Source of the DNA: Styela clava
Taxonomy: Eukaryota
Length of the DNA stretch: 64,000 nucleotides
Assembly (NCBI RefSeq): GCF_964204865.1
Contig: NC_135253.1
Location: 3,472,001 to 3,536,000 of the forward strand
Direction of reading: 5' to 3'
Positions 18,401 to 64,000 of the stretch are shown here, one piece after another (the stretch's first letter is position 1; the number at the start of each line of letters is the position of its first letter). The notes below the pieces were generated by a model that saw nothing but the letters and a program-made list of their open reading frames with translations, had not been told where the DNA came from and ran no database searches. The position numbers and the translations under genes are program-made.

Positions 18401-21129
18401 GTGATTTAGAGGTTTAGCGTCGTTTTCCAGGATGGCAAAGCGTTTCTCCGATCATTGCAAACTTCCAAGTATACTTTTGGCAGTGAGGTTCGTGGTCCTG
18501 AATTAGAGTAGTTAGACAATACTTCTGAATTTTAAACCTAACATAACCAATCAATTTTGTACATTTACATGTCTCTTTGTGCATGTAGTCATATTTAGTA
18601 GACATCAAACCCAAATTGTCATACATTTAATATTTTCCAATGGGAATGCCATGGGATGGGATAGGACAGGCATAAATTGCTATGGGCTGAAGTGGGATGG
18701 GACAAAAAGATATGACCCATTGACAAGCTTGCGTATCTGTAAACACACATCTACGAATGTGGTGTGAGAGCCTCTAGTCTAGAGTCTAAAGATTGTTTCA
18801 TATTGCGTTTACCTACAAATTCGCGATCACAAAATTGCGCTATATTTGTAAATATTTACATTATACTTTTTTATTGAAAGGCACTTCTCAAAAATAAAAA
18901 TATCTCATGTTTTCATGCGGTGAAAACGTGATATTTGTCAGTATTCATAGTTTTCCTACTCCATCGACAAGAGTTTAATCAACAAGAGTTTATTATAATA
19001 TTTAACCCATCGTGGATCGCCCTGTATAAACATGTTTGCAAAATAACGCCTTCCAAAGAAAGGCCTATTCAAAAAGCATTTTGCATTATTATGTGAAATG
19101 TTACGGTATTCTTTTCAATAAATGATTAATATTTACTCAATCGAATTTTATTTTTTTGAAAACGAAATCACCACATCAGGGTGTAGAATAAATCCCTAAT
19201 TTCATGTATCTATAGCTAAGTAAATTTGAAGCACCCAAGTTGCGTATTTTCAAATTTTTACAGGCGGGATTCGGATTTCTATCAAAGTTATGAACACGGA
19301 TATAATGTGGCAAGAATCTTGGAGGAAAACACTCGTACACCCGAAGAACTGCTCGCTATGAAAACCAAACTATCTGTAGCAATTGTCTCAAACTGTGGCT
19401 ACACTCCTGGAGCACGCACTCGAATAAAAATGCTCAAGGAGCTTATCGGATTGGGATTTAAGCTAGAAGGATTTGGTGGATGCTTTAAAGGTGGTAAATT
19501 TGCTAATGGTAAAGGCCGAGGCGAGCCGGAATTCTTCGTTGAAGTGAGGAAATATAAATTCTATTTTTCGTTTGAAAATTCTCATCACTGCAAAGACTAC
19601 ATTACTGAGAAGTTTTTCAATAATGCCATCAGATCATTGACTGTACCTGTTGTATGGGGAGCAAATAAAAAGGATTACGAAGCAGTGGCCCCACCAGGAT
19701 CATTTATATTTGCTGAAGATTTTGCTTCTATGAAAGATTTAGCAGATTATCTCAATTATCTAGATAAGAACGACACGGCATATCTAGAGTATCTTAAGTA
19801 AGTTATTACGATCATTAAATAAGTTCTACTACATTGTTTTTCTAACGCTCGAGATGGTGAAAAAAAAATAAGCCTAAAACTATAGAGTATAAGGGTACTC
19901 CCGCAGTATGTCTACCAGGTTATGGTTAGACCATAATTTTATTCTGATTTTTAGTACTATTACGAGTTCGGTGGCTGTCTGTGTTAGCCAAGTGAATATA
20001 CCATACCCCCTGTCCGTAGGTTTCAGTCCCTTCACCCAACTTGATGTGAAGTGGGCGAACAAAATTAGTTACCTTCATATTGGTACACACTACACACGCT
20101 TCTGGAGGGCCGTATTGAGAACATTATTATGTGTGAATTTTGATATATAAATTGACTAAATTATCCGTTTATCCGTGATGAATTTTATCAACGGAAAATT
20201 TGATGAAAGTCCAGTTGGCTGCCGATCCATGATATGTTTTGTGACCGAATTTATTTAGAGTTCTGTTACTTGCCACAAGCTGCTGAGATTAATCAGATAT
20301 TGATGATTCGATGCGAGCCAATAACATAATGGTTTTCGTGGTTCTTATCGCGCGATTATTTTAAAAGATAATTGAATACAACGTTCGCCGTTCGTTAACA
20401 ATTTCTATATTTGTTTTATTTAAGTAGTATTTTTGAATTTAGGGTTCATTAGACGAATTCTTTAATTTAACTTGCTTAATTTACAATGCAGTTGTAAATT
20501 CCGTTACTGAAGTATGCGCACCAAGATGGCGCACAACCTGATGTTATGCGACATCTTGGTTGCGCACACTTCAGGAGTACCGAAATTTGACTACATTTTT
20601 GGATTCGCATCGTTTTATTCTCCAGAGTAGACTATTTCAATATGTTAAAAACTCAAAAAAGTTTTTTGGAGTGTCATAATTGACTGTGATACTGTGTTAT
20701 AAAAGGCGCGGAAATATCTTCGGCTTGTCGCATCAATTTACTCATTTGACTCCAACTCCGCCAGCTAGCATATGCTGTTAAACGAACCGTAAAATCGTTA
20801 GTCGTTAGTATATACGTATACTTATCTGTTCAATTGTGGGTTGTTATACGTATACGTCTTTTATATAGGTAAGTTTGACCCCTCATTTTCCTTGTTTCAG
20901 GTGGTTGACGATGAAGCCGAGTGACATGCCACAGTACGGAAGAGCAAGAGAATGGTGTTCAATATGCAGAGCTTTGCATGGAATCAACTATGATGACAGT
21001 TACAGTCCAAAATATAATAAGACGAACCCAGTTAGGCCCTTATTTACAGACGGTGTAGCCCCTAGAACTGTTGAACACTTAATAGACTGGTATTACGGAG
21101 AAGATAATCCCGAGTGTTTTTCTAGGTAA
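12484..21129 (+). CDS. GT10 alpha-1,3/4-fucosyltransferase, copy B (intact, 495 aa, type II membrane protein)
   Basis: Exons 12484-12915, 16148-16246, 16609-16682, 16939-17058, 19264-19797, 20901-21129 total 1488 nt in one open frame. N-terminal TM ILAFLTVVIIFMEITMV, Thr-rich stem, IILVW, FNGTMTYRRDSDF and YKFYFSFENSHHCKDYITEKFF motifs. Confidence 0.95.
13189..15880. mobile_element. 2.7-kb non-autonomous DNA transposon, P- or hAT-superfamily-like, in FUT B intron 1
   Basis: 21-bp TIRs caaagtggctataaaccaagt / acttggtttatagtcactttg (1 mismatch), perfect 8-bp TSD ccttgaat (13181-13188, 15881-15888). Absent from the duplicate intron (~33000). No transposase ORF seen. Confidence 0.88.
20506..20578. 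mobile_element. Palindromic mini-element copy, loop partly deleted
   Basis: ctgaagtatgcgcaccaagatg...catcttggttgcgcacacttcagg; same family as 3368-3458. Confidence 0.7.
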
Positions 21130-22149
21130 AGTTATAGACCAGGCAAATTGGCTACAAAATTGAGGTGGTTTGAACACTCTGCTTGAAAATGATGAATAAT
21201 TAGGATTTGAGTTGAGAAAATAATTTAAATCTTTCCATTTGCTTTCTACAAATGCTTATAATAATGCGATGGGGCGGAGATACTGATGAAATTGCTGGCT
21301 CCCTATGCACTATGCAAAAACACAAGCTGTTTTTAGCGAGGTTGTAATATTGACTCGTGTATAAGGCCGGATTGGAGTCTTCTGGCCGGTACATGCAATT
21401 GTCCCCTAAGTTTCTTAAGCATCGAATCGACGTGGCCTATATAACGGGGAAATATTGACGGGATCGATGAATTTCTGCACGTGCCCATGGGAAAGCATTG
21501 AAGACCCCACATCATAAATTTAATAAAAACACATTATCATATACCAAGTAAAATATATTATATCTTCCACTGTTTGCAAAATTTATTGCTTCATGTACGA
21601 AAATTAGAATAGTTGTAACCTTCCACGATTTCATATTTCTATGCACGATTTTATTAACGATGACATTAAATAAAACAAAAATATTCATCGTTATTACAAG
21701 TTTCCTATTTACTTAATATATAATGTCCGAATGACAAAACGATTATTTGGAAGTGTTTACTTTCTTACTCAATTCTTACCTTGTTATACGTGACAATATT
21801 AAATGTTTGTGGTGCCCTATTGTTTTGGATTAAAAGTAGAAAATAAGTGTTTAAATATAGGCTTATTTGCATTGTTCTGACCGTTTATAGTCCTGGCTGG
21901 AGCTTACTCCCGATATCTGTGTCATGCGATGCCAGTGAGATGCCGCCAAAGTGGCCTTCTTTTATTAACTGCGTAGCTTTCTTTCTTATTAGATCTTTAT
22001 TGATGATTTTTTTATTGACTATTGATTTGCACTCGAAGGACGTCAGTAGGAAAGATAAATATATGCACGTGAACAAAATAAATCATTTCAGACCGAGTGA
22101 GTGATCATTTCAAATCTTATAATTCAACCTCCGAACGATTTCATTTATT

Positions 22150-24224
22150 CTACCCAACTGCGCTGACTGGTCCAGGACATGGCAAACTATTGTCAGCTTT
22201 TAAGACAAATTCATGTTGGCACCCATTTGGCAGAAGTATAGCTTCGCACTCGTCAGGTATGGTTGGATTTTCCATGCTAGAAATAGAATGTTTACGTTAT
22301 TAATGTGGCCATTGGTAAAAACAGTACATTTTAAGATACTAGAAATAGCAATTACGTTATTAATATGGCCATTGGTACAATCAGTACTTTTTAAGATGCT
22401 AGAAATAACAATTACGTTATTAATGTGGCCATTGGCAAACAGTACTTTTTACTATTCAACAATGAAGTTTATAAGAAGCGTATTCAAATATGTTTTGACA
22501 TGAGTTCAATTAATTTACAATGCATTGACTTCAATTTCGCTTTAAACTATAATAAATAAATTATGTAATTATACAGTATGTGATTTAAGGCAGATTAGGG
22601 AATCTTGGATGAAAGAGAAATCAAGTGGCAGCTTTAAACACTGGATTATATTGTAACCATATGAGAAATTGATAGCCTTAGCAAGTAAGGGGCAAGAATT
22701 TTAATGTGGTTGGTCGACCCAAAGAGTTTGTGATATGGGTTGCTTCAAGCGGCTTTGGTAAACGCGTGCGTACGGCAATCCGCGAAGTACTGTAGTCCAC
22801 GGAATCTGCATTACAATCACTGGTTTCACAAAACGTCACCCTGGCCTTTTCCAAGTGATTCAGAACAGAAATTCGTTTCATCGATAACGTACAACAAATG
22901 TAAAAAGTCGATCGCCATGCCATTATGATTAAATATAGTTTATCAGTGAATTTATAAAAAAATGTATATTTTTTGCAACCTTCTATGGAATTTGAAAAAC
23001 AATGCGCAAGTGAAAATTTCATTAAAATGCACTATGAAGTTGCATAAAGTGTAATTTATAATTTTATTCAACTTACTTGTTACAGCATGACCATGCAACT
23101 GAGTCCACGATTCGATAAACAACGAACACTTCAGACCGTTCATCTTTGTTTTTATCAGTTACAGTTGTGAAGCCAAATGGACATGATGTTGGGTGGATAT
23201 TTTCAAGATTTATAAAATAGGTTTTCGTTTCCTTGGTTGTTGGTAATGCATTTTGTACAGGAAGAGTGCAGTTTAAATAGGTCTAAAAAACGATTAAATT
23301 GAGTAACATGAGATGCATGTTGTATCTATAATTGTCCCCTCCCACGAGTATAAAAGTATCCTTGCTTCGTCGATGCAAATAATGGTTGTTCTATCTTATA
23401 AGGGCAGTTACATGATTCGGAGCTCTGCAAACTGGAAAGTCGATATGAAGTTCTCCTCTTACATTCGCAATAGTTAAAAATTTCAAAGTTCATTTTCTTT
23501 TTACGCTTATTGCGATACACATACATCGTCCGTCGTTTGATTAAAGACCACAAAACCTGAGGCATTTGGTATGGTATTAAATAATTTTTCTGTATACAAA
23601 CGCAACGGCAAAAGTTCTCAAAAATAAAAAAAGTGTCGCGCACCAAAAGTTTGCAGAGGTCAGCAACGTTCCCTCCAAGCTGCGCCGCCGCGTAGCTGGC
23701 CGATAATCCCCGCGCAGTACTTTCGTTCTGCCGCGCACTGGAGTTTATAAATAAATTCTGTGTTCGTTTAAAATGTTGTGTTCTTTTTTATTTTTTCGCG
23801 CAGACTTTTTTGAACCTCACATGGCCTTCTATTTCGCGCAACTAGGCAAGCTCTTAGAGGGTACGTTGGAGGTCAGACATAAATATAGATCTCAAATCTT
23901 CCCATTCTGCCCATATGTCATATTTCGATTTGGATGGTAATCTGTAGCGACATTATAAAACTATAGCACTGTTAGTACCGTGAAATTTTGATATTGATGT
24001 AAAATATAAATACACACCCCATACGTTACTGGATCGCAGCTACACTCAACACAGGGACCAGCGTTCCATTTTTGTCCTACATGATGATACTTCGTGAATG
24101 TCATTGAATCAGTTTTTGTAGTATGCAAACACCCTCGACCCAGTTGAGTTTCTCCGTAATCGCATGCTGCGTTGGCACAAGCGAATGTGACAATCCAAAC
24201 AGAAATCAAGATGGAGTATTTCAT
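22150..24224 (-). CDS. Secreted beta-microseminoprotein/small serum protein-like protein, type 1, copy 1 (179 aa)
   Basis: Minus-strand exons 24224-24018, 23282-23077, 22276-22150 total 540 nt. Signal peptide; W-x4-C-x2-CxC ... CC ... PDEC ... C ... PCPGPVSAVG* Cys pattern of the PSP94/MSMB family; 12 Cys in mature chain. Confidence 0.88.
22274..22450. repeat. 3 x ~60-bp tandem repeat overlapping the exon-3 splice acceptor
   Basis: Unit atgctagaaatagcaattacgttattaatgtggccattggtacaaacagtactttttaag; also present at ~39039-39220. Confidence 0.9.
23664..23868. mobile_element. 205-bp hAT-type MITE
   Basis: TIRs caacgttccctccaag / cttagagggtacgttg, perfect 8-bp TSD gaggtcag. Empty site in the duplicate (~40378, gaagtcag). 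Confidence 0.9.
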
Positions 24225-24316
24225 TCTGGACTTTTTTGATGAAAATGAACACTGTATCACAAAATCAACGGTAGCACCTAACTCAATTATGTAGACGTTA
24301 TGCATTGCAACGCGGA

Positions 24317-24342
24317 TTTATACTTTTCCATTTGTTACGTCA
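24317..24342 (-). promoter_or_regulatory. Putative TATA box with upstream CRE-like TGACGTAA for the minus-strand MSMB-like gene
   Basis: Minus strand reads tgacgtaacaaatggaaaagTATAAAtcc ~95 bp upstream of the ATG; conserved in the duplicate. Confidence 0.5.
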
Positions 24343-26157
24343 CATCGACACAAAAGTTAATCGTAGACAAGAGAAAGTGCATATGACGACGGCAATAAAA
24401 AAATCACAAACACTTTAGTAGTAAACAATATTCTGCTGAATTCTAATTTTAGCTCGCAACTGCTTCTCACACATGAATCAGAAAGTGATTCAGAATTTAT
24501 CATTGTCAAATTTATTAACCATCAATACTGGTACTTCAATTGTTTTTTTCGTGTTTTAGTGCTTATACAGTTAGCGATATTCTTTTGAATTGAAAGCCAC
24601 AGGAGATAAACACGCGATAAACTAATCATTTTTTAATCAATTGTACAATATAAAGATGATTTGTACCTGAGATGCCGGTTTAAATGAATAGTGACAGAAC
24701 CATCTAAAATCGGTCAACCGATTGATCATTCCAAGCTTTAACTATTACGGGTGGACAACATTGAACGAATGACTATGGTCGATGAATGTCATTTCATAGT
24801 TACTATTTCACAGCTATCCTAATAGCATTAATTCATAACTCGGTATAGAAAGAAAGAAATAATTAATACTTCAATCGTTGTGTCTTTTTTTTTTATATAG
24901 TATTTGTTTTTGCAAAGCAAGGCTTGAATAACACTTAACTGGCTAGCAATAAGTTACAGTTAAGCTGGCCTTTAGGGCTCCATGGAAACACGGAATAAAC
25001 ATCCTTATCAGATTATTAGTAGAACAAAATTAACCGAGTACGGTATTTCCATTTGTCCATCATGTAATTCGGTTGAACAGACCTCACCGACTATTCGACT
25101 TAGCTCAAGTGTAAATGCAAATGAAAGCGCATTAAATTACTACCAACTTCAATTAATGTTAAACTGATATCTTTTTATTGCAGATTCATGGAAGATGTAT
25201 CATATAGTGGGAAAGTCCTACAAACACCTGAGGCGTTAATCGTGCATACTTAGAATAGAAACATCGTACTTTATTATTAGTGTGTCTAACTTAAAATAGA
25301 TCATAATTATTTGTTAGGTTTTCATGTAAAGCTTGTCGCAAAATATTTGCAAGAATTCTTGACGTCATCTGAATGATATCACATATAAATCACTGTCTAT
25401 GTTTTGAATAATTGTTTCAATTTCACCAGAAAAATATTATTTTTGTGATAAATTAGAATTTCAGTTTCTACCATGGTAACAATAACAACGATAACATAAC
25501 TAGATTGTTTTAAAAATTGCACACTTGACATTTTTCTGTGAAAATGATTTGACTTGACTTACACATTTGAACAAGTTTGCATGAAAGTGTTTAAAGCAAA
25601 TGAAGTGCAAGCTGGTATGATTAAATGCAAATCAAGTAGAGGAAATGATATTTCAAATTTGTCCGTCCTAGCACAATATGGTACATGTCGCTTCCAACTG
25701 AACCCCACATAGACCTGATTGGCTCCGCAATTCTTATTTAAAATAGTGATCTGAGATATATTTTTAATACTTTTGGTATCACTTCAGCAAGAAAAGTGCT
25801 GGCCATAGTTTAGCCGTATGTGATGTACGAGAGTCACACGTAATGAATTTAAACTAAAGCAGCATAAGCGTCTCACTCTCAGACGGCATTGAAAATCCCA
25901 ATTGCTCTGTGGTCTCATAAGATGACGCTTTTTCCTAAAATACCAAATATTGTGCTTTAAAAATGTCTTTCCGCGGTTATTCACAAATTCGAATTGAGCT
26001 AGTTTATTTTTGTCAATAATTAGTATTCTTACTGATTCTCGGGAATACGAAAACAGAGTGTTCACGACGGGCTGTCTCGAAAACAAAAATCGGTACTTTC
26101 GTTCTAACACCAAACGTAAACACCGTCGCGTCGCATATTTTTGTGCCACGGAAAATA

Positions 26158-26164
26158 TATAAAA
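26158..26164 (+). promoter_or_regulatory. Putative TATA box for the plus-strand MSMB-like gene
   Basis: ggaaaataTATAAAAg ~120 bp upstream of ATG 26282. Confidence 0.5.
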
Positions 26165-26281
26165 GACTTGCGTTCACATCAAACGAAACATAACTTAAAC
26201 CAGTCAAAAGAAGCGTTTGTCGTAATATCAAATTGCATTGTATTAATTTGCACGTATTAGATTTTTTTTACTTCAAGTACA

Positions 26282-27158
26282 ATGGAAAGTTGCATCCAGA
26301 ACGCAGTTTTCCTAACTTTAATCTCATTCGCGATTTCTGTTCGCATAAACGCCAGTTGCGAATACGACATATTCGAAGACGATTGGTGTAAACATACTGT
26401 AAAAACCGCTACAATGAGATCTACAATGTTTTACCGAGCTGGTGAAAAGTGGAAAGATGGGCCGTGCGTTGATTGCAGTTGCGGTCCGGAGACTTACAAG
26501 GTATGTATCATTACAATGATATTAATAATTGTTTGGAAAATGAGAAAGTTTGATGATTTTTTTTTTGTTAATTTTCGCAGACTGTCCTGAACTGCTCGCT
26601 GGAAGTGGAAAATGGAAAGGCAAGATCTGATGAAGCCGAATCCTATTTTATAAATATTGATAATGTGTATCCAACATCATGTCCGTTTGGTTTCACCGAA
26701 ATTACAACAGAAAACAGAGATCTGGCATCTCAAATGTTTATAGTCTATCGAGTTGTTGACACAGTTTCCAAAACGTGCTGTACCAGGTGAGTGATGTTAA
26801 AATTAAATCACTGAGCCATGTAATATATATGAATACTTTCTACTAAGCACATATGTAACAGTAAATTCTTTAGTTTACAAACAATGAGCAGGCAAGCGTC
26901 ATGTGCGATAGTAACCTTCGCAAATAGGAGTTCAGAAAGCAAAAATGTGAAACAGGATTCCTATTACTACAAGTTCATAATACAATACCATAGTTTGTTT
27001 ATAACTCCAACGTATCGCGATTATGTTTTTGCAGAATGAATCCGAGTGAAATCCCCGAAGAATGTGAAGCAATACGCTCCGACGAATGCGAATATAAATT
27101 TGTTCTGAAATCGAACAATGGTATTCCATGTCCTGGACCAATTTTTATGTCTGGATAA
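26282..27158 (+). CDS. Secreted beta-microseminoprotein-like protein, type 2, copy 1 (182 aa)
   Basis: Exons 26282-26500, 26581-26786, 27035-27158 total 549 nt. Signal peptide; WKDGPCVDCSC...KTCCTR...PEECEAIRSDECEYKFVLKSNNGIPCPGPIFMSG*. Same exon phases as type 1. Confidence 0.9.
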
Positions 27159-27829
27159 AGAAAGAAACATGTCGATAAACTATGAAAATAATTGACATGA
27201 TAGAAACAAGGCGTTAATTCTATATCTGCACCTTTCTGTTATTTTATTGTGAAATTGTGAAAAGAAATCAAATTTGGGTGATTTTATTATCTTGCTTATA
27301 TATAACAATATCCGTAATGTTTTATAAATAAATGTTCTATTGCATCCAATGCGTTGCTATTGCTGTGACAATTGGTAGATGCAAAAATACATGTGTATCG
27401 TGCCTTTATGTCGAAGTTTTGTGTTACATCCTGCGAGAGCTTTATGAAAATACGCAAAAACTTTTTTAACAGGCCGACATTTAGTGTCATCGAGAAGCAT
27501 CTCGTAGAATAGGATTGTTATACTTCCCAGAAAAGAAGAAAACCGACAAGACATAGTATAATTATATAGCAAACCTTTTGTCCAGTCACTTACTTCATTT
27601 AGGTATAAAAAATCCGGATGTATTGTGTACTGAACTGTAAGTTCTTTTGTTCTTTTTCCTTGTTCCTATTTCGGATCCGCATGTGTCTGTTGCCACAAGG
27701 ATGCTTGACTGAGAGAGTATTATAAAGATAAACAGGAATACCATAATCTCTTTCCACGGAATAGCAAGTAAAAAAAAACGCCCAATTGTTTGTTCCCTGA
27801 ATATGGGAATATGAGAACCACGAGAAACG

Positions 27830-28005
27830 TTGTACCACGTTTCCCACTTGACACGTGGTACAAGTGGGACACGTGGTCCAGTGGGACATGTGGGACACGT
27901 GGTACACGTGGGAAAAGTGGTAGACGTGGGACAAGTGGTAGACGTTGGACAAGTGGTACACGTGGGACAAGTGGTACACGTGGGACGAGTGATACAAGTG
28001 GGACA
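27830..28005. repeat. Remnant foldback arm (9-bp units caagtggga/cacgtggta) ending at the duplication junction
   Basis: Counterpart of 44606-44819 but lacks the terminal TIR; joined to FUT exon-1 sequence at 28009. Confidence 0.88.
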
Positions 28006-28050
28006 TTACATGGAGATTACAATGGTGAACAGATGGTAGACATTAAATAC

Positions 28051-31000
28051 CGGTGTCTCAAAAATGTCGTTTCCCACTTGTCCCACTTGTCCCACGTGTC
28101 CCACGTGTCCCACTTGTCCCACGTGTCCCACGTGTCCCACTTGTCCCACGTGTCTCACTTGTCCTACGTGTCCCACTTGTTCCGCTTGTGCCACTTGTCC
28201 CACTTGTCCCACATGTCCCACTTGTATCCCTTTTGCCACGTGTACCACTTGTCCCACCTGTCCCACTTGTACCACTTGTATCCCTTGTCCCACGTGTCCC
28301 ACCTGTCCCACTTGTAACACTTGTACCACTTGTCCCACGTGTACCACTTGTACCACTTGCCCGACGTGTCCCACTTTTCCCACTCGTCCCACATGTCCCA
28401 CGTGTACCACTTGTCCCACTTGCCCCACGTGTCCCACGTGTCCCACTTGCCCCACGTGTCCCACGAGTCCCACCTGTCCCACGTGTCCCACTTGTACCAT
28501 GTGTACCACTTGTATCCCTTGTGCCACGTGTACCACTTGTACCACGTGTACCACTTGTACCACTTGTCCCACATGTCACACTTAACCCACTTGTCCCACT
28601 TTTTCACGGGCCCCACGTGTCCCGCGTGCCCCACTTGTCCCATCGATTTTTATTGCCGATATCGGTCGGGGGAGGAGGTATCGGCCGTGTTACTCTGTGC
28701 GTTATCACTGTAGCGCTATAAACCTCGCCAGACTTTTTTCGTATTCACCATATTTTTTTTTTGGTTATCGCTGATAAATACGAATTTGTAACTATTATTG
28801 AATGCAATTCAGTAAAGCGTATTTTCTTCCCTCGGTTCCTGACTCAATCACTTTTATTATACAAATCAGAGCGCATTGTAAAGCAAATCAGGTACAGGTA
28901 AGAATTAACCGACGGCTATCGCTAACAGGTTGAACCGATAAATGCAAGTATTTTTATTTTTGTTTTCTTTTTGCACCTATCATATTTTTAATTTCTAATC
29001 TTGCATAAAGCACGCCCATATCGTTTTTCGTAAATTTAGAATTGTCGAACCAGATAAGTACGACTGGTAATTATTGTATTCCATGGAAATTTTACGAGAT
29101 ATTTGGGACTGGAAGAAATATTATTTTGACCACGTAGAAATGCCATTATTGCCGTATTTCCGAGCGGCATCCGAGTAATAGTTTCACATTTAATGCCTTT
29201 GATCGGCGCTACATGCGAGCGTGTTTTTGTACTTTGTTTTTGTACGATTATGACGCTACTGACATCCGCGAGTTATACTACTCTCCCAAATTAGTTTTCA
29301 CGACTTCTAATGTTTTCATTTTCAAATGTGGGTACAACTGACTACGGATTAATGGTCGATATTTGAAATAGGGCTTGCGAAATATTCATTATAAACCGCC
29401 AGGTAAAGAGAGGCGTACTAAACGTATTTGGATTTTCGCTGTGAACGACGCATCCTTTTCAGCTTATTAAACGCCTTACGTCGTCGTGAATTGACCCCCC
29501 ATCCCCCGTTGGAAATTTTTTAGCTGTGCCCATGTCGGTATTTATCTGATATCAACCCGGCTATATTCCGGCACTGATAGACCAGGTCATAATTTGTCAC
29601 CCATGTTATCAATAAACAAAAATTTCGTGCTTGCTATTACCAGAAATTCTATTTTGCTGAATGAAAGTGCGACCCGCGACCAGCAAACGTGTTGTTGCGA
29701 ACAAGCGCAAGGATTGTGGATTGTGACGTCCACCACGAAACGAAATTGTTTGTCGAACATGCAAAAAACCAGACCACATACAGAAGCACTGCAACTTTGG
29801 GAAACAAAATGAACGAACGGAAGAGACGACGAGACCAATTATTACGTCAAGACCAAGTGGAACAGAAGCCGCGCCATCTTCACCTGAAGTCCCACATGGA
29901 CGGAAAAATGCACAAAAATTTAGATTTCACACCGGGCGAACGGACTACTACAACCTTAAGGTCCATATATGATAGATTCAGATTAAAAACGTATGACCCA
30001 CCAAAATTACACGTAGCACGTGATTGGCACTCCACACATCTCTTGGACCGCACATTGAAAAAACACTTTACGAATATCGAACGACAATCTGCATACCTCA
30101 TAGCCTTGGATGGGTTTTTGTTTGGAAATAGAAAGTGGCGTTACAGAATTGTCCGCCGAGATGCAAACTATATCGACCATTAAAACTAAATTGTAAATTT
30201 TGCGCGAACAATAATGATACAACGAAACACATATTTCTTGAATGCCCAAAATACCTAGTAATACATAAGAAAATTAGGCTGACTCTGGAAAAAATCTGCG
30301 GCAAAAAACTAGATGTTCCCCCACAATCAATTTTTGACAATTCCTATTCAGGCGAAAACAAATTGGCAATTCTGAAAATGTACAGTATTCTTAAATTGAA
30401 ACCCATCACTCTCAAATATACTATGGATAGAGAAAACAGATATGTGAATCAAACAGATATATCTTCAATACTCAGAACTGTCTACCGGAAATTTAAAGAC
30501 TGGATTTTTATAACCATAGACCGATATGGTTCGGCAGATGTGTACGCTCTATCCAAAAACTGGAAATCAACGTTAGATGGATGATATAGAGCGTGCGACA
30601 TCAAATGACAAATCTACAGGATGCACAACATGGAGCCAACTCATCAGTCACCACAAATGGTAGCTGAATTTCATCTTATCAGTGCCCGATACGCCAGCAC
30701 CGCTGTGTAAAAAGCTTGTGCTTGCAAATCGCCTCATGGTCATCGAATGGTTGTTGTAACTACCCATGTACCAGCTAAATTGGCCGATGTATTTGTTTCG
30801 AAATTTGGCGGATTTAAAAAAAATATAAGTAATACCATCCTAAATCGCGGATTTGATGTAAGGAAGCTTACCATATTAGTTTGGTAAAGACGATCCATTT
30901 TTCAAAGAAGAATGAGTCTTATACTTCCGTTGGCATTATCGGTCATGGAGGCATTGGGCTGGATTTCGGTAATGTCATCCTGATGACCTGATCCGTCATA

Positions 31001-32355
31001 AGAAAAAAAAAGTTTTGTTCACATATATCTCATTCGCCGAATATTTTGTCCATATGATTCCGTTTATCATACTTCTCATTCACCAGATATTTTGATATAT
31101 ATATTTCGTTTCCCTCATAAAACAGTCGTCGTGATTATTCGCTCGTTAAAAAAAAACGACTTGTGAGTGAGACTTGTCTGTGGCGTATAATTTTCAATCC
31201 ATGGCAATTAACTTAATTATGTCTAACTTAACTCGCGTTACGACTTTTAAATACATTGATACTCTAAAAAAACAAATGTAATATGTGGTCATAAACACAT
31301 GAGATAAACTGTCTAATTATATTTTATTTTGATAGGTATCTTTGCAATCTTGTTAATTCGTTATCGCCATTAGGAATCCGTATTTTTGCAATTTTGCGGA
31401 TTAGAGAAATCTGTACCTGTAACTACGATCCGTTCAATTGCAATTCTGCCACTCGGATTATTTTTAAGATATAACCGTTATTATCCCACGACGTAAAATC
31501 TATTTTAGTACAATGAAAGTCGATTGGATTCATTAATTTATCATCATAATTAATTTACCTTTACAATCCGCGTCGCGTTTTCAACTTTGTATAATGATAA
31601 CACTGAAACTTTCGGCAGCAATATAAAGAAATGGATAAAAAGATAAATCCAACGCGCAATTATTTTTTTTATTTAAGTGATGGTATGGTTTCCAACGCTA
31701 ACCAACCATAATACCAAAACAATCGACCATTTTAGCAAAATGCACGCAGTATTAGCGACAAGTGGGACATGTGGTACAAGTGGGAAATGTTGTACAAGTG
31801 GGAAACGTGGTTCAAGTGTGACACGTGGTACAAGTGGTACACGTGGTACAAGTGGTACAAGTGACAAAAGTTGTACAAGTGGTACACGTGGTACAAGTGG
31901 TACACATGGTACAAGTGGTACATGTGGTACAAGTGGTACACATGGTACAAGTGGTACAAGTGGTACACATGGTACAAGTGGTACAAGTGGTACACGTTGT
32001 GCAAGTGGTACACATGGTACAAGTGGTACACATGGTACAAAGGGTACAAGTGGGACACGTGGGACAAGTGGTACAAGTAGTACACGTGGGACAAGTGGGA
32101 CAAGTGTTACACGTGGGACAAGTGGGAAAGGTGGGACACGTGGGACAAGTGGGATAAGTGGGATAAGTAGGACAAGTGAGACAAGTGGGACATGTGGGAC
32201 AAGTGGGACAAGTGGAGCAAGTGGGACACGTGGGACAAGTGGGACACGTGGGACAAGTCGGACACGTGGGACAAGTGGGACACGTGGGACAAGTGGGACA
32301 CGTGGGACAAGTGGGACACGTGGGACAAGTGGGACACGACATTTTTGAGACACCC
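28051..32355. mobile_element. Foldback-type (MULE-like) transposon, 4.3 kb, non-autonomous
   Basis: Termini (c)ggtgtctcaaaaatgtcg / cgacatttttgagacaccc. Inverted arms of ~600 bp made of 9-bp units (28051-~28641, ~31757-32355). TSD attaaatac (28042-28050, 32356-32364; 11 bp if the terminal base is assigned to target). Uninterrupted site visible at ~12594 in FUT B. Confidence 0.93.
29680..30584 (+). mobile_element. 3' fragment of non-LTR retrotransposon ORF2 (zf-RVT type, L1/Tx1-like) inside the foldback element
   Basis: Overlapping ORFs 29689-30183 and 30135-30584 join by a frameshift near actatatcga (~30170). CKFCANNNDTTKHIFLECP matches the C-x2-C-x8-H-x4-C finger found C-terminal to RT. Confidence 0.75.
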
Positions 32356-35300
32356 ATTAAATACCACCAATCCTTCAGCAACCAGCAGACTGAACATGAA
32401 CAAATGGAATATAAAGAGTTCTTTCCGCGAACTTGAAATTGACTTCAACGGAGGTATTCCCTCTATTAAAAAAGAGATAGATGATATTTTGGATATGAAA
32501 GGTGGCGATTATAATTCAAATGAATCACCGGAAGTTACAAAGGATGCAACACACACACAAACAACTACCATACGTTCTTCATTTACAACAACTAATAATG
32601 ACTCGATGTACATACAATCAGAGCTGATTCGTAGGCTGAAGGCTTCGACTGACAGAAAGGTTAGTGACTCCTTGTTATTACGTTCATATGTAGCTCAAAG
32701 CAAAAATAAATGAGCCAAATTACTACAAAATAATCCACTTACAAGGTCGCCTTCCGTATTAGATTCCTTTTAGTAAATTCAAAAAGTAAATTTCTACTTT
32801 AACCGGCTAGTATTTGGAATCTTATTCGATTGAAAAATGCATTTCGTGGATTAGAAAGATGAAATTACTGACATGAAAGTTAGATTACCTTATTGAAATA
32901 TTATAATCCTAACATCTAGTAAAATGATATACTCAACAAAATAATATTATATAAATGTATGTTGTCAAAAATGTCACTAAACATCGGGACACGATTGGCT
33001 ATAGTTACTTTACATATGGATCTAACATTTTGGAATAAAATGAACTTCAAGGGGAAGGATGCCCCTGCTCGTTAAGCAGCATAAATATTAAATTACGTCT
33101 ACTTGCACTATGAAATGACATTCGTGATTTCACTTTTACATTCTGTATGTACAACGTGTAATTCCAGTGTGGTAAACTTCTGGGCCATGCCTTCATTGCG
33201 TGAACGTGTCATCGAACTCGCAATGAAAAGTAGAACCGATGCATAGTCATTTTTTTAACCAAATATTTATTTTAGATAATACTTGTCTGGATTCCAATGT
33301 TTGGTGTGAAGGATCCACATCCCATCGACGCTAATAAATGCGGGAATTGTGAAGTAACTTATGACAGAAACAAGGTGAATTCTTTTCAAGTTCTGTCTTA
33401 AATTATATTTTTACCTTGATGTATTTATTTCAAAAATTTCAGGTTGTACATTTTTGCGCATAAACAGTTGAAAAGGTTTTGATCTTTTAGCATAGTTAGT
33501 GGTAATAGAAATATGTTGCCATGTTCACTGAATTTAAATATCAGAACTGAATCAAATGCATGTGTTTATGTAGCATTATTTTAACTGAAATATCGTTTAA
33601 ATTTGTGTTCGAATTATATACAATTCTCAGTGGTGGAAATCATAGATATATACTCGTAATATAAAAAAAATATCAATGACTGCGAGATACTATTTACCCC
33701 AATCCTATTTGTGTACACAAATGCAGATAAATGACGAGCAAACTGGGGCAGTTGTGTTTCACTTTGATGCAATTAGAGCTAACAACATGCCATCTACGAG
33801 GTAGGTCCAAAATTTGAATGCTAGTTGAAATTCAATATCCTGAAAGCCAGTAGGCTTAGAGAAGGATCAACTTATGCTTATGTGTTTCATCTAATGCCAT
33901 TTTAACACGGGATATGTGTTTCATATTTCCAATACTAACAAGTTTCAAAACCTTCCTTACTGAGTTATAAATATATCGTTCAGGTTCCATTCTTCCCAAA
34001 ATAGCTACAAAAATATTATACAGTGATGTTTATTCGTTTACGGATTTCTCTTCAGAAACCTTAGTCAACTTTACATATACTGAGACCTGGAATCGACTGC
34101 AACCCTGCGCGTCGTCAGAGGACATTCCTTACAGTTCGAGGACAATTTTCATTTTAATGGGACCATGACATACAGGTTAGGTCCCTTTAGATATTGCCAA
34201 ATCTAAAATTTATATGAAATCTGTTAGATATGTTTTTTGTTTTGTTTCTAGTCATATCTATGTTGCAGGAGATCAACACACAAATTAATAGACACAAAAC
34301 TACTTTATGTATCTTTGTCATATGTCGTTTGTGGGGAGTCAGCTTTCCATTTCTGCCGTGTCGCATTTTTTCCAAAAGCCCACAAAACTTCGCGGTGGCT
34401 CAACAGCTACATGAACATTATCAACAATAAATTTATCAACATGTCTAAAGTCTCAAAAATCGATCAAATATATTGAACTTCATTGTTAATCAATTTTATC
34501 TTGCTCATAAACATAATCCAGGCGAAGGTCGCTACGCTACCCGCGAGGGAAATGTAAGGAAAAGATTTGAGTATAAAAAAGCGGATGTTATATAATGAAT
34601 TTGATGGTTGCACCGTGTCGTTGCGCCCAGTCCCTTTAGTCCATTAAGTAGTTTAAATAATACGTCATAAACTGATCACTCTTAATGGAAGTCGATTTCT
34701 ATCAATTTTAGGGTCTGTGTTCACTCAACCGTGACGAAATTATTTTGTCATTATCTTCACTGTATATACCTTGTGTGGCCCAAATATGACATCCCCATCT
34801 ATTACCATTCTCGAGATATGACCTAAAATCACTGGAGCGTGACTGACATGTGGGAGAAAAAAATTCTACCTAAGTGACAAGTGATAGGTAATAATAATAC
34901 ATTCTCGAGCTCGAACACAATTTTAGCTTTCATGGGAATCTTGGCACGTAGGTCTTGGATAGTGTCCACATAACCCAGGAAATTTCATTGCGATCTGGCC
35001 AGAGGAAGGGGGTTTCTGTGAGTTGGAGGCGGGTACCTGTCACTGAAGACACACTCGAATAACTTTGTGATTTAGAGGTTTAGCGTCGTTTTCCAGGATG
35101 GCAAAGCGTTTCTCCGATCATTGCAAACTTCCAAGTATACTTTTGGCAGTGAGGTTCGTGGTCCTGAATTAGAGTAGTTAGACAATACTTCTGAATTTTA
35201 AACCTAACATAACCAATCAATTTTGTACATTTACATGTCTCTTTGTGCATGTAGTCATATTTAGTAGACATCAAACCCAAATTGTCATACATTTAATATT

Positions 35301-37152
35301 TTCCAATGGGAATGCCATGGGATGGGATAGGACAGGCATAAATTGCTAAGGGCTGAAGTGGGATGGGACAGAAAGATATGTCCCATGGACAAGCTTGCGT
35401 ATCTGTAAACACACATCTACGAATGTGGTGTGAGAGCCTCTAGTCTAGAGTCTAAAGATTGTTTCATATTGCGTTTACCTACGAATTCGCGATCACAAAA
35501 TTGCGCTATATTTGTAAATATTTACATTATACTTTTTTATTGAAAGGCACTTCTCAAAAATAAAAATATCTCATGTTTTCATGCGGTGAAAACGTGATAT
35601 TTGTCAGTATTCATAATTTTCCTACTCCATCGACAAGAGTTTAATCAACAAGAGTTTATTATAATATTTAACCCATCGTGGATCGCCCTGTATAAACATG
35701 TTTGCAAAATAACGCCTTCCAAAGAAAGGCCTATGCATTATTATGTGAAATGTTACGGTATTCTTTTCAATAAATGATTAATATTTACTCAATCGAATTT
35801 TATTTTTTTGAAAACGAAATCACCGCATCAGGGTGTAGAATAAATCCCTAATTTCATGTATCTATAGCTAAGTAAATTTGAAGCACCCAAGTTGCGTATT
35901 TTCAAATTTTTACAGGCGGGATTCGGATTTCTATCAAAGTTATGAACACGGATATAATGTGGCAAGAATCTTGGAGGAAAACACTCGTACACCCGAAGAA
36001 CTGCTCGCTATGAAAACCAAACTATCTGTAGCAATTGTCTCAAACTGTGGCTACACTCCTGGAGCACGCACTCGAATAAAAATGCTTAAGGAGCTTATCG
36101 GATTGGGATTCAAGCTAGAAGGATTTGGTGGATGCTTTAAAGGTGGTAAATTTGCTAATGGTAAAGGCCGAGGCGAGCCGGAATTCTTCGTTGAAGTGAG
36201 AAAATACAAATTCTATTTTTCGTTTGAAAATTCTCATCACTGCAAAGACTACATTACTGAGAAGTTTTTCAATAATGCCATCAGAACATTGACTGTACCT
36301 GTTGTATGGGGAGCAAATAAAAAGGATTACGAAGCAGTGGCCCCACCAGGATCATTTATATTTGCTGAAGATTTTGCTTCTATGAAAGATTTAGCAGATT
36401 ATCTCAATTATCTAGATAAGAACGACACGGCATATCTAGAGTATCTTAAGTAAGTTATTACGATCAATAAATAATTTCTACTACATTGTTTTTCTAACGC
36501 ACGAGATGGTGAGAAAAAAACTAAGCTTAAAACTATAGTGTATTTAGGGTACTCCCGCGGTATGTGTACCAGGTTAGAGTTAGGCCATAATTTTATTCTG
36601 ATATTTGGTACTATTACGAGTTCGGGGGCTGTCTGTGTTAGCCAAGTGAATATACCATACCCCCTGTCCGTAGGTTTCAGTCCCTTCACCCAACTTGATG
36701 TGAAGTAGGCGAACAAAATTAGTTACCTTCATATTGGTACACACACTTCTGGAGGACCGTATTTAGAACATTATTATTTGTGAATTTTGATATATAAATT
36801 GACTAAATTATCCGTTCATCCGTAATGAATTTTATCAACGGAAAATTTGATGAAAGTCCAGGTGGCCGCCGATTCATGATATGTTTTGTGGCCGGATTTA
36901 TTTAGAGTTTTGTTACTTGCCACAAGCTGCTGAGATTAATCAGATATTGATGATTCGATGCGAGCCATTAACATAATGGTTTTCGTGGTTCTTATCGCGC
37001 GATTATTTTGAAATATAATTGAATACAACTTTCGCCGTTTTTCAACATTTTCTATATTTGTTTTATTTAAGTAGTATTTTTGAATTTAGGGTTCATTAGA
37101 CGAATTCTTTAATTTTACCTGCTTAATTTACAATGCAGTTGTAAATTCCGTT

Positions 37153-37253
37153 ACTGAAGTATTCGCACCAAGATGGCGCACAACCTGAACTCAGGTTGTG
37201 TACCAGGTTAAGGTTCAGGTTATGCGACATCTTGGTGCGCATACTTCAGGAGT
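37153..37253. mobile_element. Palindromic mini-element copy
   Basis: Same inverted repeat as 3368-3458 with the full loop, opposite orientation. Confidence 0.72.
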
Positions 37254-38914
37254 ACCGAAATTTGACTACATTTTTGGATTCGCATCGCTTTATTCTCCAG
37301 AGTAAACTATTTCAATATGTTAAAAACTCAGAAAAGTTTTTTGAAGTGTCAGAATTGACTGTGATACTGTGTTATAAAAGGCGCGCAAATATCTTCGGCT
37401 TGTCGCATCAATTTACTCATTTATCTATCTCATTTAAATCTATCGTCCAGAACGTACCGTAAAGTCATATGGAAGCTCATCATAAAATCATGTTTCTAAT
37501 CAGTTAGCCGTTAGTATATACGTATACTTATCTGTTCAATTGTAGCCTTGTAGGGTGTTAGACGTATACGTCTTTAATATAGGTAAGTTTGACACCTGAT
37601 TTTCCTATTTTCAGGTGGTTGACGATGGAGCCGAGTGACATGCCACAGTACGGATGAGTAAGAGAATGGTGTTCCATATGCAGAGCTTTGCATGGAATCA
37701 ACTATGATGACAGTTACAGTCCAAAATATAATAAGACGAACCCAGTTAGGCCCTTATTTACAGACTGAGTAGCCCCTAGAACTGTTGAACACTTAATAGA
37801 CTGGTATTACGGAGAAGATAATCCCGAGTGTTTTTCTAGGTAAAGTTACAGACCAGGCAAATTGGCTACAAAATTGGGGTGATTTGAACACTCTGCTTGA
37901 AAATGATGAATAATTAGGATTTGAGTTGAGAAAATAATTCAAATATTTCTATTTGCTTTCTACAAAGGCTTATAATAATGCGATGAGGCGGAGACACTGA
38001 TGAAATTGCTGGCTCCCTATGCACTATGCAAAAACTCAAGCTGTCTTTATCGAGGTTGTAATATTGACTCGTGTATAAGGCAGGATTGGAGTCTTCTGGC
38101 AGGTACATGCAATTGTCCCCTAAGTTTCTTAAGCCTCGAATCGACGTGGCTTATATGACGGGGAAATATTGACGGGATCGATGTATTTCAGCAGGTGCCC
38201 ATGGGAAAGCATTGAAGACCCCACATCATAAATTTAATAGAAACACATTATCATCTTTTCCAATACTCAAAGTAAAATATATTATATCTTCCACTGTTCG
38301 CAAAATTTATTGCTTCATGTACGACAATGAGAATAGTTGTAGTAAACTTCCACGATTTCATATTTCTATGCACGATTTTATTAACGATGACATTAAATAA
38401 AACAAAAGATATTCATCGTTATTACAAGTTTCCTATGTACTCAATATATAAACATGTAATGATGCTCCGAATGACAAAACGATTATTTGGAAGTGTTTAC
38501 TTTCTTACTCAATTCTTACCTCGTTATACGTGACAATATTAAATGTCTGTGGTGCCCTATTGTTTTGGATTAAAAGTAGAAAATAAGTGTTTAAATATAG
38601 GCTTATTTGCATTGTTCTGACCGTTTTAGTCATGGCTGGAGCTTACACCCGATATCTGTGTAATGCGATGCCGGTGAGATGCCGCCAAAGTGGCCTTCTT
38701 TTATTAACTGCGTAGCTTTTTTTCTTATTAGATCTTTAATTGATGATTTTTTTATTGGTTTGATTGATTTTTTATTGACTATTGATTTGCACTCGAAGGA
38801 CGTCAGTAGGAAAGATACATATATACACGTGAACAAAATAAAATAAATCATTTCAGACCGAGTGAGTGATCATTTTAAATCTTATAATTCAACCTCCGAA
38901 CGATTTCATTTATT

Positions 38915-48834: not shown

Positions 48835-48853
48835 TCACGTGACAGGAGATTGG
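48835..48853. promoter_or_regulatory. E-box (TCACGTGAC) plus inverted CCAAT box upstream of HHIP-like copy 1
   Basis: tcacgtgac at 48835-48843 and attgg at 48849-48853, ~110 bp before the ATG. Motif match only. Confidence 0.35.
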
Positions 48854-48957
48854 TTGCATCCGACATAAACAGGTATCGGATTTTGAACGCCAAAGGCTAT
48901 ATCTAACCTAGTTCAAGTTTATGTAAGTGACCGTTGCAAATAAATAAAGAATAGTTC

Positions 48958-55512
<6,555 letters not shown>

Positions 55513-58857: not shown

Positions 58858-64000
<5,143 letters not shown>

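What the first reader, a model, noticed from the sequence alone, without database searches (positions are those of the whole stretch)
27830..28070. 15.4-kb gene-bearing duplication whose breakpoint is a foldback transposon arm
Seen: unit 1 ends in a 9-bp array that in unit 2 terminates in an intact TIR (~44818). At the junction the array is fused (gtgggacatta|catggagattac) to codon ~27 of FUT exon 1, and a complete element of the same family inserted 42 bp further on. A 42-bp exon sliver is thus sandwiched between two opposed arms. Inference: a transposase-driven (alternative or sister-chromatid transposition) or array-breakage duplication that doubled the MSMB-like pair and created a dead-on-arrival FUT, plus a local hop.
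Basis: partly seen in the sequence, partly recalled or inferred. Interest (0 to 1): 0.75.

Follow-up and report, generated by a model that had tools for sequence, protein, structure and literature searches.

The report
Tandem duplication broken in foldback arm
A 15-kb stretch carrying a fucosyltransferase gene and two small cysteine-rich protein genes was copied head-to-tail, and the joint lies inside the repeat-built arm of a hairpin-forming transposon; it is a real but fairly ordinary transposon-associated rearrangement, not a new mechanism.

Summary
Unit 1 (12561-28005) is repeated as unit 2 (28009-28051 plus 32355-44781), with 3.8% substitutions and five large indels. The joint reads array | TTA | third base of FUT codon 26. 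In unit 2 the same 9-bp array runs 36 bp further and ends in an exact 18-bp terminal repeat at 44800-44817. A 4,303-bp foldback element (E2, 28052-32354) sits 43 bp past the joint, with perfect ends and an 11-bp target duplication. A 143-letter short-read contig from another study bridges both joints without a difference, so this is not an assembler mis-join.

The joint is inside the arm, not at the element tip, and the upstream parent has no array. That argues against transposase-driven alternative transposition and rules out homologous exchange. The best fit is a break in the arm joined non-homologously to FUT exon 1. E2 is an ordinary separate insertion; I could not settle whether it came before or after the duplication. 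FUT copy 2 lacks its start and carries two in-frame stops.

One further tandem duplication (contig C5, 6.9 kb, 99.5%) also breaks inside an arm of this family, but my small survey shows no enrichment. No earlier scan note describes such a joint on other DNA.

The parts
12561..28005 (+). Duplication unit 1 (15,445 bp): FUT-B from codon 26 onward, two head-to-head cysteine-rich genes, and a truncated foldback arm.
   Evidence: Self-BLAST blocks; 448 mismatches in 11,902 aligned bases, 3.8%.
12484..12908 (+). FUT-B exon 1, intact in unit 1. The upstream breakpoint falls at 12560|12561, after 25 codons and two bases.
   Evidence: ORF and frame. The 5' part is single-copy in the genome.
19226..19801 (+). 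FUT-B catalytic exon (GT10). Its unit-2 counterpart is 35878-36453.
   Evidence: Pfam PF00852, E = 5.6e-41 and 6.8e-41; 5 differences in 576 bases.
23961..24305 (-). Unit-2 counterpart is 40463-40808.
   Evidence: ORFs. No Pfam PSP94 match anywhere in the genome; this exon's ORF itself was not scanned against Pfam.
26282..26590 (+). First exon of cysteine-rich gene 2. Unit-2 counterpart is 43059-43366.
   Evidence: ORFs. Pfam found nothing for the unit-2 ORF.
27830..28005 (+). Truncated foldback arm X' at the end of unit 1. It has a roughly 22-bp stub in the opposite orientation, then about 17 nine-bp units, and no terminal repeat.
   Evidence: Sequence, TRF, alignment to unit 2.
28006..28008 (+). 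Three bases (TTA) at the duplication joint that neither parent sequence explains.
   Evidence: Comparison of 27990-28020 with 12550-12575 and 44770-44800.
28009..28051 (+). 43-bp sliver of FUT exon 1 (codons 27-40) that opens unit 2. Its last 11 bases are the left copy of E2's target duplication.
   Evidence: 42 of 43 bases match 12561-12603.
28052..32354 (+). E2, a complete non-autonomous foldback element of 4,303 bp. Arms are 28052-28642 and 31757-32354. The interior carries a LINE reverse-transcriptase tail fragment and no transposase.
   Evidence: Perfect 18-bp ends, TRF, ORFs, weak zf-RVT hit, same interior in copy L001.
32355..44781 (+). Rest of unit 2 (12,427 bp). It starts with the right copy of the 11-bp target duplication (32355-32365).
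37610..37840 (+). Last FUT exon of copy 2, with two in-frame stop codons.
   Evidence: Translation beside unit 1's exon 20896-21126.
44607..44817 (+). Full-length arm X at the end of unit 2: the same stub, about 19 nine-bp units, then the intact 18-bp terminal repeat at 44800-44817.
44818..46540 (+). E3, an older and degenerate copy of the family. Its opposite-orientation arm (44818-44943) lacks a terminal repeat and abuts X's tip. Its interior is 80-90% like E2's, inverted.

Best explanation
This is a real tandem duplication, and not a recent one. It arose when a DNA break, or a stalled replication fork, inside the 9-bp-repeat arm of a resident, already one-sided foldback transposon (X) was joined without homology to a site 15.4 kb upstream, in FUT exon 1, on the sister chromatid or the homologue. 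The join left three stray bases. The hairpin-prone arm probably predisposed the site to break; that step is inferred. The event doubled two small cysteine-rich genes and made a FUT copy with no promoter, start codon or membrane anchor, which has since gained two stop codons. E2 is a separate, ordinary cut-and-paste insertion of the same family into the leftover exon piece, 46 bp from the truncated arm. The two now form a composite palindrome. Shown: the anatomy, the joint, the reality of the joint in reads, the decay of FUT copy 2, and E2's target duplication. Inferred: that the arm caused the break, the repair pathway, and the order of the E2 insertion and the duplication.
For: The joint lies 36 bp inside the arm and lacks the terminal repeat that unit 2 keeps. 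The upstream parent (12540-12570) has no array, so there was no homology to recombine on. Only three unexplained bases and at most 1-3 bases of microhomology sit at the joint. A short-read contig of run X4, from a different study and sample than the Hi-C run, bridges the joint exactly. Stretches identical in both units carry about twice the contig depth of unit-specific stretches in two of three runs: X1 70.7 against 34.8, X4 538 against 330 and 242-299. In the assembly the unique flank occurs only at the two units, and the FUT 5' end only once. E2 has perfect ends and an 11-bp target duplication, and copies L001 and L003 show 10-11 bp duplications. The arm plus E2 folds at z = -14.3. A second, independent tandem duplication on C5 (6.93 kb, 99.5%) has its upstream breakpoint 108 bp inside an arm of another copy, again not at the tip. 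Of 10 loci centred on a terminal repeat, 6 have no partner end within 9 kb, so arms are often broken. Passages of PMC8277862 propose fork stalling and breaks in the repetitive ends of Drosophila FB4 followed by template switching.
Against: A causal role for the arm is not demonstrated. In my small survey of same-strand pairs or runs of family ends, 4 proved to be duplications. Only 1 of those 4 (C5) breaks in an arm. In 2 (C14 and the 3.75-kb array on C3) the arm is a passenger, and in 1 (C6) the ends were out of view. By my rough estimate chance alone would give one such case about a quarter of the time. This window was also picked after the fact. The order of E2 and the duplication is open, because E2's nearest relatives are about 94% identical. 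The 3.8% divergence may partly be allelic if the exchange was between homologues. I did not measure depth against single-copy flanks, and X3's depths are inconsistent: it shows no twofold excess for the shared stretch (25.5 against 25.3) and only 8-9 for unit 2.
Confidence: 0.5

Rival explanations
1. Same non-homologous duplication, but the arm is a bystander. The breakpoint fell in the array by chance, and the reader noticed it because it looks striking.
For: There is no enrichment in my survey: 1 of 4 duplications that carry a family end breaks in an arm. The region duplicates readily without these arrays. Examples are an older FUT paralogue at 5830-6390, a second duplication at 48851-54955 against 58751-63695, and a 2.9-kb tandem duplication in L014 that starts 1.1 kb from a mini-element.
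Against: The arrays are a very small share of the genome, though I did not measure the share, so two independent arm-internal breakpoints (the window and C5) are unlikely by chance. Arms are often truncated: 6 of 10 loci. Hairpin-forming repeats are established fragile sites (general knowledge; the FB4 passages in PMC8277862).
Confidence: 0.25
2. E2 was already in FUT exon 1 when the duplication formed, so both breakpoints lay at foldback arms: 43 bp outside E2's left tip and inside X's arm. Unit 1 lacks E2 because the exchange was between homologues, one of them without E2, or because E2 later excised precisely from unit 1 and restored FUT.
For: It explains without any homing why E2 sits 43 bp from the joint. 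E2 is not demonstrably young, since the best other copies are about 94% identical. More than 90% of excisions of the foldback-type MULE Muta1 in yeast were precise (passage of PMC5499845). Divergence of 3.8% with several TE-sized indels between the units could be allelic.
Against: It needs one more step than insertion after the duplication. Unit 1 shows a clean, footprint-free site. Family ends cluster at short range elsewhere in the genome, so a later nearby insertion is not unlikely.
Confidence: 0.13
3. Transposase-driven alternative transposition (sister-chromatid or reversed-ends type). X's right end was cut and integrated into FUT exon 1 on the sister chromatid, and the terminal 36 bp were lost afterwards.
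For: A family end lies at the right place in unit 2. In maize, alternative transposition of Ac ends makes tandem direct duplications (passages of PMC3744419). X abuts another family member (E3) tip-to-arm, so paired ends were nearby.
Against: The defining signature, an element tip joined precisely to the target, is absent. The joint is 36 bp inside the arm and carries three stray bases. The C5 case also breaks 108 bp inside an arm. E2 between the copies has a normal two-sided target duplication and is not a one-sided alternative-transposition joint. No transposase was found for this family.
Confidence: 0.08
4. Assembly artefact: two haplotypes of a single-copy locus mis-joined at the repeat.
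For: The units differ by an amount that could be allelic in a very polymorphic invertebrate. Depth against single-copy flanks was not measured.
Against: A 143-letter short-read contig with no differences bridges array|sliver and sliver|E2 with at least 48 letters on each side. The joint runs into unique exon sequence, not a shared repeat an assembler could slip on. There are no gaps, since the window has no N.
Confidence: 0.02

Closest known systems
Drosophila Foldback (FB) elements and FB-associated rearrangements (Potter 1982; Collins & Rubin 1984; I saw these only as reference-list entries and in a passage of PMC8277862)
   Same: Long inverted arms built of short tandem repeats. Element size is very variable: 61 bp to 5.6 kb in the copies I read. 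Many copies are internally rearranged or one-sided, and the family is associated with chromosomal rearrangements.
   Different: A different organism (an earlier scan note calls the genome sea-squirt-like; I did not test that). The 9-bp unit and 18-bp tip are unrelated. The target duplication is 10-11 bp. The rearrangement here is a tandem gene duplication with a non-homologous joint.
Muta1 and other 'type 2 foldback' Mutator-like elements (passages of PMC5499845)
   Same: Ends are made of subterminal tandem repeats, and the target duplication is long. By analogy, the 9-bp units would be transposase-binding sites, which could explain why a truncated arm still attracts a new copy.
   Different: No MULE transposase was found inside any copy with this tip. 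None of the 67 MULE-domain matches in the genome lies within 10 kb of a listed tip. The Mutator-type foldback noted 13.4 Mb away is a different family. Superfamily membership is therefore untested.
Tandem direct duplications made by reversed-ends or sister-chromatid transposition of maize Ac/Ds (passages of PMC3744419)
   Same: The outcome is a tandem direct duplication with a transposon at the joint between the copies.
   Different: In maize the joint is an exact element tip next to the target, with the 8-bp target duplication shared between reciprocal products. Here the joint is inside the arm, the tip is missing, and the complete element nearby has its own two-sided duplication.
[quoted passage not shown]
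   Same: A break or stall in a repetitive foldback end, and a joint with little or no microhomology to a nearby sequence in cis.
   Different: Those events capture small pieces (median 224 bp) inside the transposon. Here a 15.4-kb chromosomal segment is duplicated in tandem and nothing is mobilised. Supplementary Data 7 of that paper, on FB4 structural variants, could not be read.
Galileo, a P-superfamily foldback-like element that generates Drosophila inversions by ectopic recombination (PMC2775673; search listing and start of abstract only)
   Same: A foldback-type element sits at natural rearrangement breakpoints.
   Different: Galileo's inversions arise by homologous exchange between two copies. 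Here only one parent breakpoint carries the repeat, so homologous exchange is excluded.

Membership tests
Foldback-type DNA transposon family (applies to E2, X, E3) | Long inverted arms made of short tandem subrepeats | tested here: met
   TRF finds period 9/18 at 28072-28642 (63.6 copies) and at 31757-32338 in the opposite orientation. The inverted self-match is 80-84%.
Foldback-type DNA transposon family (applies to E2, X, E3) | Conserved terminal sequence shared by many dispersed copies | tested here: met
   The 18-bp tip occurs 379 times in the genome with up to 1 mismatch and 0 times for the reversed control. One variant occurs 116 times exactly.
Foldback-type DNA transposon family (applies to E2, X, E3) | Target-site duplication flanking complete copies | tested here: met
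   E2 has 11 of 11 identical. L001 and L003 have 10-11 bp. L002 and L005 are degenerate.
Foldback-type DNA transposon family (applies to E2, X, E3) | A transposase-encoding (autonomous) member | tested here: not met
   The interiors of E2 and of the 5.6-kb copy L001 hold only LINE reverse-transcriptase tail fragments. I read only a few copies.
Mutator-like (MULE) superfamily | Target duplication of 9-11 bp | tested here: met
   10-11 bp. The range expected for MULEs is recalled from memory, not taken from a call.
Mutator-like (MULE) superfamily | MULE transposase associated with these ends | tested here: inconclusive
   None of the 67 PF10551 matches lies within 10 kb of a listed tip. The Mutator-type foldback at C4:16.9 Mb shares neither tip nor sequence with E2.
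Alternative-transposition duplication (Ac/Ds RET or SCT type) | Duplication joint is an exact element tip against the target site | tested here: not met
   The joint is 36 bp inside the arm, the tip is absent, and TTA filler is present.
Alternative-transposition duplication (Ac/Ds RET or SCT type) | Target duplication shared with a reciprocal deletion product | not testable with these tools
   The reciprocal chromatid is not available.
NAHR (unequal homologous crossing-over) duplication | The same repeat at both parental breakpoints, giving a hybrid repeat at the joint | tested here: not met
   No array at 12500-12600, and the joint runs from array into unique exon sequence.
Non-homologous (end-joining or template-switch) tandem duplication at a hairpin-prone repeat | Joint with little or no microhomology, or with a short filler | tested here: met
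   Three filler bases in the window and 2-3 ambiguous bases in the C5 case.
Non-homologous (end-joining or template-switch) tandem duplication at a hairpin-prone repeat | Breakpoints recur in the repeat more often than chance allows | tested here: inconclusive
   One further case (C5) among 4 duplications that carry a family end.
Haplotype mis-join (false duplication) | No reads bridge the joint | tested here: not met
   X4 contig 27958-28100 has no differences and at least 48 letters on each side of the joint.

The most novel reading that the evidence does not exclude
In this genome the repeat-built arms of this foldback family act as self-reinforcing trouble spots. They break and seed tandem gene duplications, as in the window and on C5. 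Their truncated stumps, which are still arrays of presumed transposase-binding units, attract new copies of the family to within tens of bases, as with E2 at 46 bp and X tip-to-arm with E3. That builds ever larger composite palindromes which break again. Under this reading the family would be a measurable driver of local gene-copy turnover.
Probability: 0.2. Interest if true: 0.6.

Novelty: new member of a known kind. Interest (0 to 1): 0.35.

Why it matters
The locus is a cleanly resolved natural example of how a gene cluster grows. One event doubled two small secreted-protein genes and produced a headless glycosyltransferase pseudogene, and the joint is preserved to the base. It separates two ideas that are often conflated: a transposon acting as an enzyme-driven rearranger, and a transposon acting as a fragile, hairpin-prone piece of DNA. 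Here the second idea fits. If the arms proved to be recurrent breakpoints genome-wide, the family would be a handle on tandem-duplication rates in this animal lineage. As a single case it adds to what has been known for foldback elements since the 1980s.

Tried and rejected
(1) Empty-site allele of E2. Read laying gave a joint 28040->32355 (skips 4,314; 11 letters shared; side 30) in X1, X3 and X4, and I first read it as an E2-free allele. I rejected that reading. The first 31-letter word that unit 1 shares with unit 2's right flank starts at 12593 (= 32355). A unit-1 contig must therefore end at 12622 (= 32384), which gives exactly 30 letters on the right. The joint's depth (47 / 17.6 / 531) matches unit-1-specific contigs and exceeds unit-2-specific ones (32 / 8-9 / 242-299). 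It is most likely unit 1's intact exon laid across E2. One caveat remains: no T>G at 28037 was listed.

(2) Selection on FUT copy 2. The catalytic exon differs at only 5 of 576 bases, 4 of them silent. But the whole tract 17393-19792, intron included, is only about 0.8% diverged. That points to gene conversion, not constraint, and the last exon has two stops.

(3) 'MSMB-like' label. Pfam gave nothing for the ORF. PSP94 gave no match in the genome, and none in the control genomes either, so that search is weak.

(4) Autonomous partner. None was found.

(5) Genome-wide census of breakpoints. I planned 76 loci. Only 20 were delivered, each cut to its first 10 kb, so only the 10 plus-strand ones contained the tip. 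None of these 10 had a direct duplication abutting an arm. L018 has an inverted duplication of element plus flank.

(6) The 3.75-kb tandem array on C3 looked like a third case, but its unit boundary lies about 0.9 kb from the arm.

(7) Organism name. A literature search for foldback + transposable element + ascidian found 0 papers.

(8) Exons were compared one by one.

(9) Supplements of PMC8277862 were not read.
Full report
ANATOMY. The window is C4:3472001-3536000 of a 377-Mb assembly and contains no N. Self-BLAST shows one colinear direct repeat. Blocks 12593-13099, 15887-17785, 18210-20541, 20543-23616, 23907-24480 and 24479-28005 match 32355-44781 at 90.9-96.8% (refined). The 43 bases 28009-28051 match 12561-12603 with one mismatch. 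Unit 1 is therefore 12561-28005, 15,445 bp. Unit 2 is 28009-28051 plus 32355-44781, 12,470 bp. Between the two parts of unit 2 lies E2 (28052-32354, 4,303 bp). E2 has perfect 18-bp inverted ends and an 11-bp target duplication, CATTAAATACC, at 28041-51 and 32355-65. Its arms are about 590 bp of 9-bp units.

Unit 1 ends in a 9-bp array at 27850-28005 (17.4 copies). In unit 2 the same array (44626-44799) runs 36 bp further and ends in the same 18-bp tip at 44800-44817. The joint reads ...gtgggaca | tta | catggagatt.... Base 12561 is the third base of FUT codon 26. The sliver is 43 bp rather than 42.

IS IT REAL? Run X4 (sample S2, study P1) yields a 143-letter contig laid at 27958-28100 with no differences. 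It has 48 and 95 letters on either side of 28005|28006, and 94 and 49 on either side of 28051|28052. X4 is from a different study and sample than the only raw-read run, X5, a Hi-C run of study P2. I do not know which sample the assembly came from. X5 was too thin to help, at about 1-3 reads per bin.

Contigs from stretches that are identical in both units (27495-27614 and 27585-27699) have about twice the depth of unit-specific contigs in two of three runs. In X1 the figures are 70.7 against 34.8 and 42.4 for unit 1 and 32 for unit 2. In X4 they are 538 against 330 for unit 1 and 242-299 for unit 2. X3 does not fit: the shared stretch has 25.5, unit 1 has 25.3, and unit 2 only 8-9. I did not lay single-copy flanks, so I cannot tell a homozygous from a heterozygous duplication.

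In the assembly the unique flank 27300-27830 occurs only at the two units. The FUT promoter and first 26 codons occur once. There is no alternative haplotig. A haplotype mis-join is excluded for the joint itself.

THE ELEMENT FAMILY. The 18-bp tip occurs 379 times in the genome with up to one mismatch, and 0 times for the reversed control. One variant occurs 116 times exactly. The copies I read range from 61 bp (L014) to 5.6 kb (L001). L001 shares E2's interior at 94-96%, including fragments of a LINE reverse-transcriptase tail (weak zf-RVT hit, E = 0.0021), and has no transposase. Target duplications are 10-11 bp in L001 and L003.

This is a non-autonomous foldback-type family. A MULE affiliation is suggested only by the duplication length. 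None of the 67 MULE-domain matches lies within 10 kb of a listed tip. Arms are often broken: 6 of 10 tip-centred loci have no partner tip within 9 kb. X itself has only a 22-bp stub of its other arm, in both units.

MECHANISM. Homologous unequal exchange is excluded, because the upstream parent has no array. Transposase-driven alternative transposition predicts an exact element tip against the target, as at the Ac joints in maize (passages of PMC3744419). Here the joint is 36 bp inside the arm, the tip is missing, and three stray bases are present. E2 has a normal two-sided target duplication, so it is a standard insertion and not a one-sided transposition joint.

What remains is a break or stalled fork inside the arm, joined without homology to FUT exon 1 on the sister chromatid or homologue. 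The pathway could be end joining or template switching; I cannot tell which. This is the kind of event proposed for the repetitive ends of Drosophila FB4 (passages of PMC8277862).

TIMING. The units differ at 448 of 11,902 aligned bases, 3.8%. There are also five indels of 81 bp to 2.7 kb. A 2.4-kb tract (17393-19792) is only about 0.8% diverged, intron included, which points to gene conversion. If the exchange was between homologues in a polymorphic species, part of the divergence predates the event.

E2's closest relatives elsewhere in the genome are about 94% identical, so E2 is not demonstrably young. The apparent E2-empty joint is better explained as unit 1's intact exon cross-laid. A unit-1 contig must stop at 12622 (= 32384), where words become shared with unit 2. 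That gives the reported side of exactly 30 letters, and the joint's depth equals unit-1 depth. The order of E2 and the duplication therefore stays open. If E2 came first, both breakpoints lay at foldback arms, and unit 1 lacks E2 either through inter-homologue exchange or through precise excision. Precise excision is frequent for the foldback-type MULE Muta1 (passage of PMC5499845).

GENES. FUT-B exons were placed by tblastx against the upstream paralogue, and the catalytic exon is GT10 (E = 5.6e-41). Copy 2 lacks the promoter, the start codon and most of the membrane anchor. E2 splits its exon 1, and its last exon (37610-37840) has two in-frame stops. The first exons of the two head-to-head cysteine-rich genes are open in both units. 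Pfam does not support the MSMB label.

GENOME-WIDE LOOK. Exact tips are clustered. Thirteen adjacent gaps are 100 kb or less, against about 1.6 expected, and 8 are 10 kb or less, against 0.16 expected. After removing three single elements and three duplications, seven close pairs remain. That supports local transposition in general.

I followed up same-strand pairs or runs of tips. C5:23552195-23566054 is a 6.93-kb tandem duplication at 99.5% (28 mismatches). Its upstream breakpoint is 108 bp inside the left arm of a 589-bp copy, not at the tip, with 2-3 ambiguous bases at the joint. For C6, the duplication ends were out of view. C14 is a 1.8-kb repeat with the arm inside it. C10 has no duplication. 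C3 is an array of at least 11 units of 3.75 kb at 99.7%, whose unit boundary lies about 0.9 kb from the arm.

So 1 of 4 duplications that carry a tip breaks in an arm. By my rough estimate, chance alone would give that about a quarter of the time. The causal role of the arm therefore rests on two cases plus general knowledge about hairpin-prone repeats.

COMPARISON AND VERDICT. The family behaves like classical foldback elements. The rearrangement belongs to the known class of transposon-associated, non-homologous tandem duplications. It is not a member of the alternative-transposition class, because the defining joint was tested and not met, and it is not NAHR.

The boldest reading still open is that these arms both break and attract new copies. 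E2 sits 46 bp from the stump, X's tip lies directly against E3's arm, and several same-strand tips lie 41-72 bp apart (not followed up). Together these would build composite palindromes such as 27830-28642 (z = -14.3). A search for foldback + transposable element + ascidian found no paper. The searches turned up only the general precedents cited above.

Noticed in passing
G000:C5:23552195-23566054 (L026+L028, 1196-15055): Young 6.93-kb tandem duplication (99.5%, 28 mismatches). Its upstream breakpoint lies 108 bp inside the left arm of a 589-bp copy of the same foldback family. The downstream breakpoint is in unique sequence.
   Followed up: yes
G000:C3:2928334 to at least 2971193 (L033+L032): Tandem array of a 3.75-kb unit, at least 11 copies at about 99.7% identity. 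Each unit carries a one-sided foldback arm with tip. The unit boundary is about 0.9 kb from the arm. One spacing is 6,168 bp instead of 3,753.
   Followed up: partly
window 27830-27870 and 44607-44650; also L032 about 1108-1140 and L020 1001-1040: One-sided copies have a 15-22-bp stub of one arm folded directly onto a long opposite arm, forming a mini-hairpin centre. This form recurs, and I cannot say how it arises.
   Followed up: partly
window 44800-44830: X's intact tip abuts, with no spacer, the interior of E3's opposite-orientation arm, which lacks its own tip. This could be a nested insertion or an inversion within one old element; it is unresolved.
   Followed up: partly
window 17393-19792 vs 34480-36444: A 2.4-kb tract of only about 0.8% divergence, intron included, inside units that otherwise differ by 3-8%. 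Gene conversion between the copies is likely.
   Followed up: partly
window 13185-15867: A 2.68-kb insertion present only in unit 1 (FUT-B intron 1), flanked by near-identical CTATAG-containing octamers. It looks like another transposon.
   Followed up: no
window 27620-27770: A roughly 150-bp dispersed repeat (83-86% matches on at least seven contigs) lies just upstream of the truncated arm. It is unrelated to the arm arrays.
   Followed up: no
window 48851-54955 vs 58751-63695: A second, older tandem duplication (84-92%) lies downstream. An older FUT paralogue at 5830-6390 is 78.6% identical to both unit copies. The region duplicates repeatedly.
   Followed up: no
L014 2194-8148 (G000:C1:16048520-16054474): A 2.9-kb tandem duplication (97.3%) starts 1.1 kb from a 61-bp mini-copy of the family that consists of little more than two tips.
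   Followed up: no
L018 100-4441 (G000:C1:31052790-31057131): Inverted duplication of a foldback copy together with about 0.9 kb of its outside flank.
   Followed up: no
G000:C16:13446412/13446462, C16:21274536/21274577, C8:20935547/20935592, C3:8167384/8167456: Same-strand tips only 41-72 bp apart. They could be terminal duplications or insertions right beside an existing tip.
   Followed up: no
window 29689-30584 and L001 4168-5217: E2 and the 5.6-kb copy L001 share an interior made of LINE reverse-transcriptase tail fragments, so a composite carrying retrotransposon debris has itself been mobilised.
   Followed up: partly
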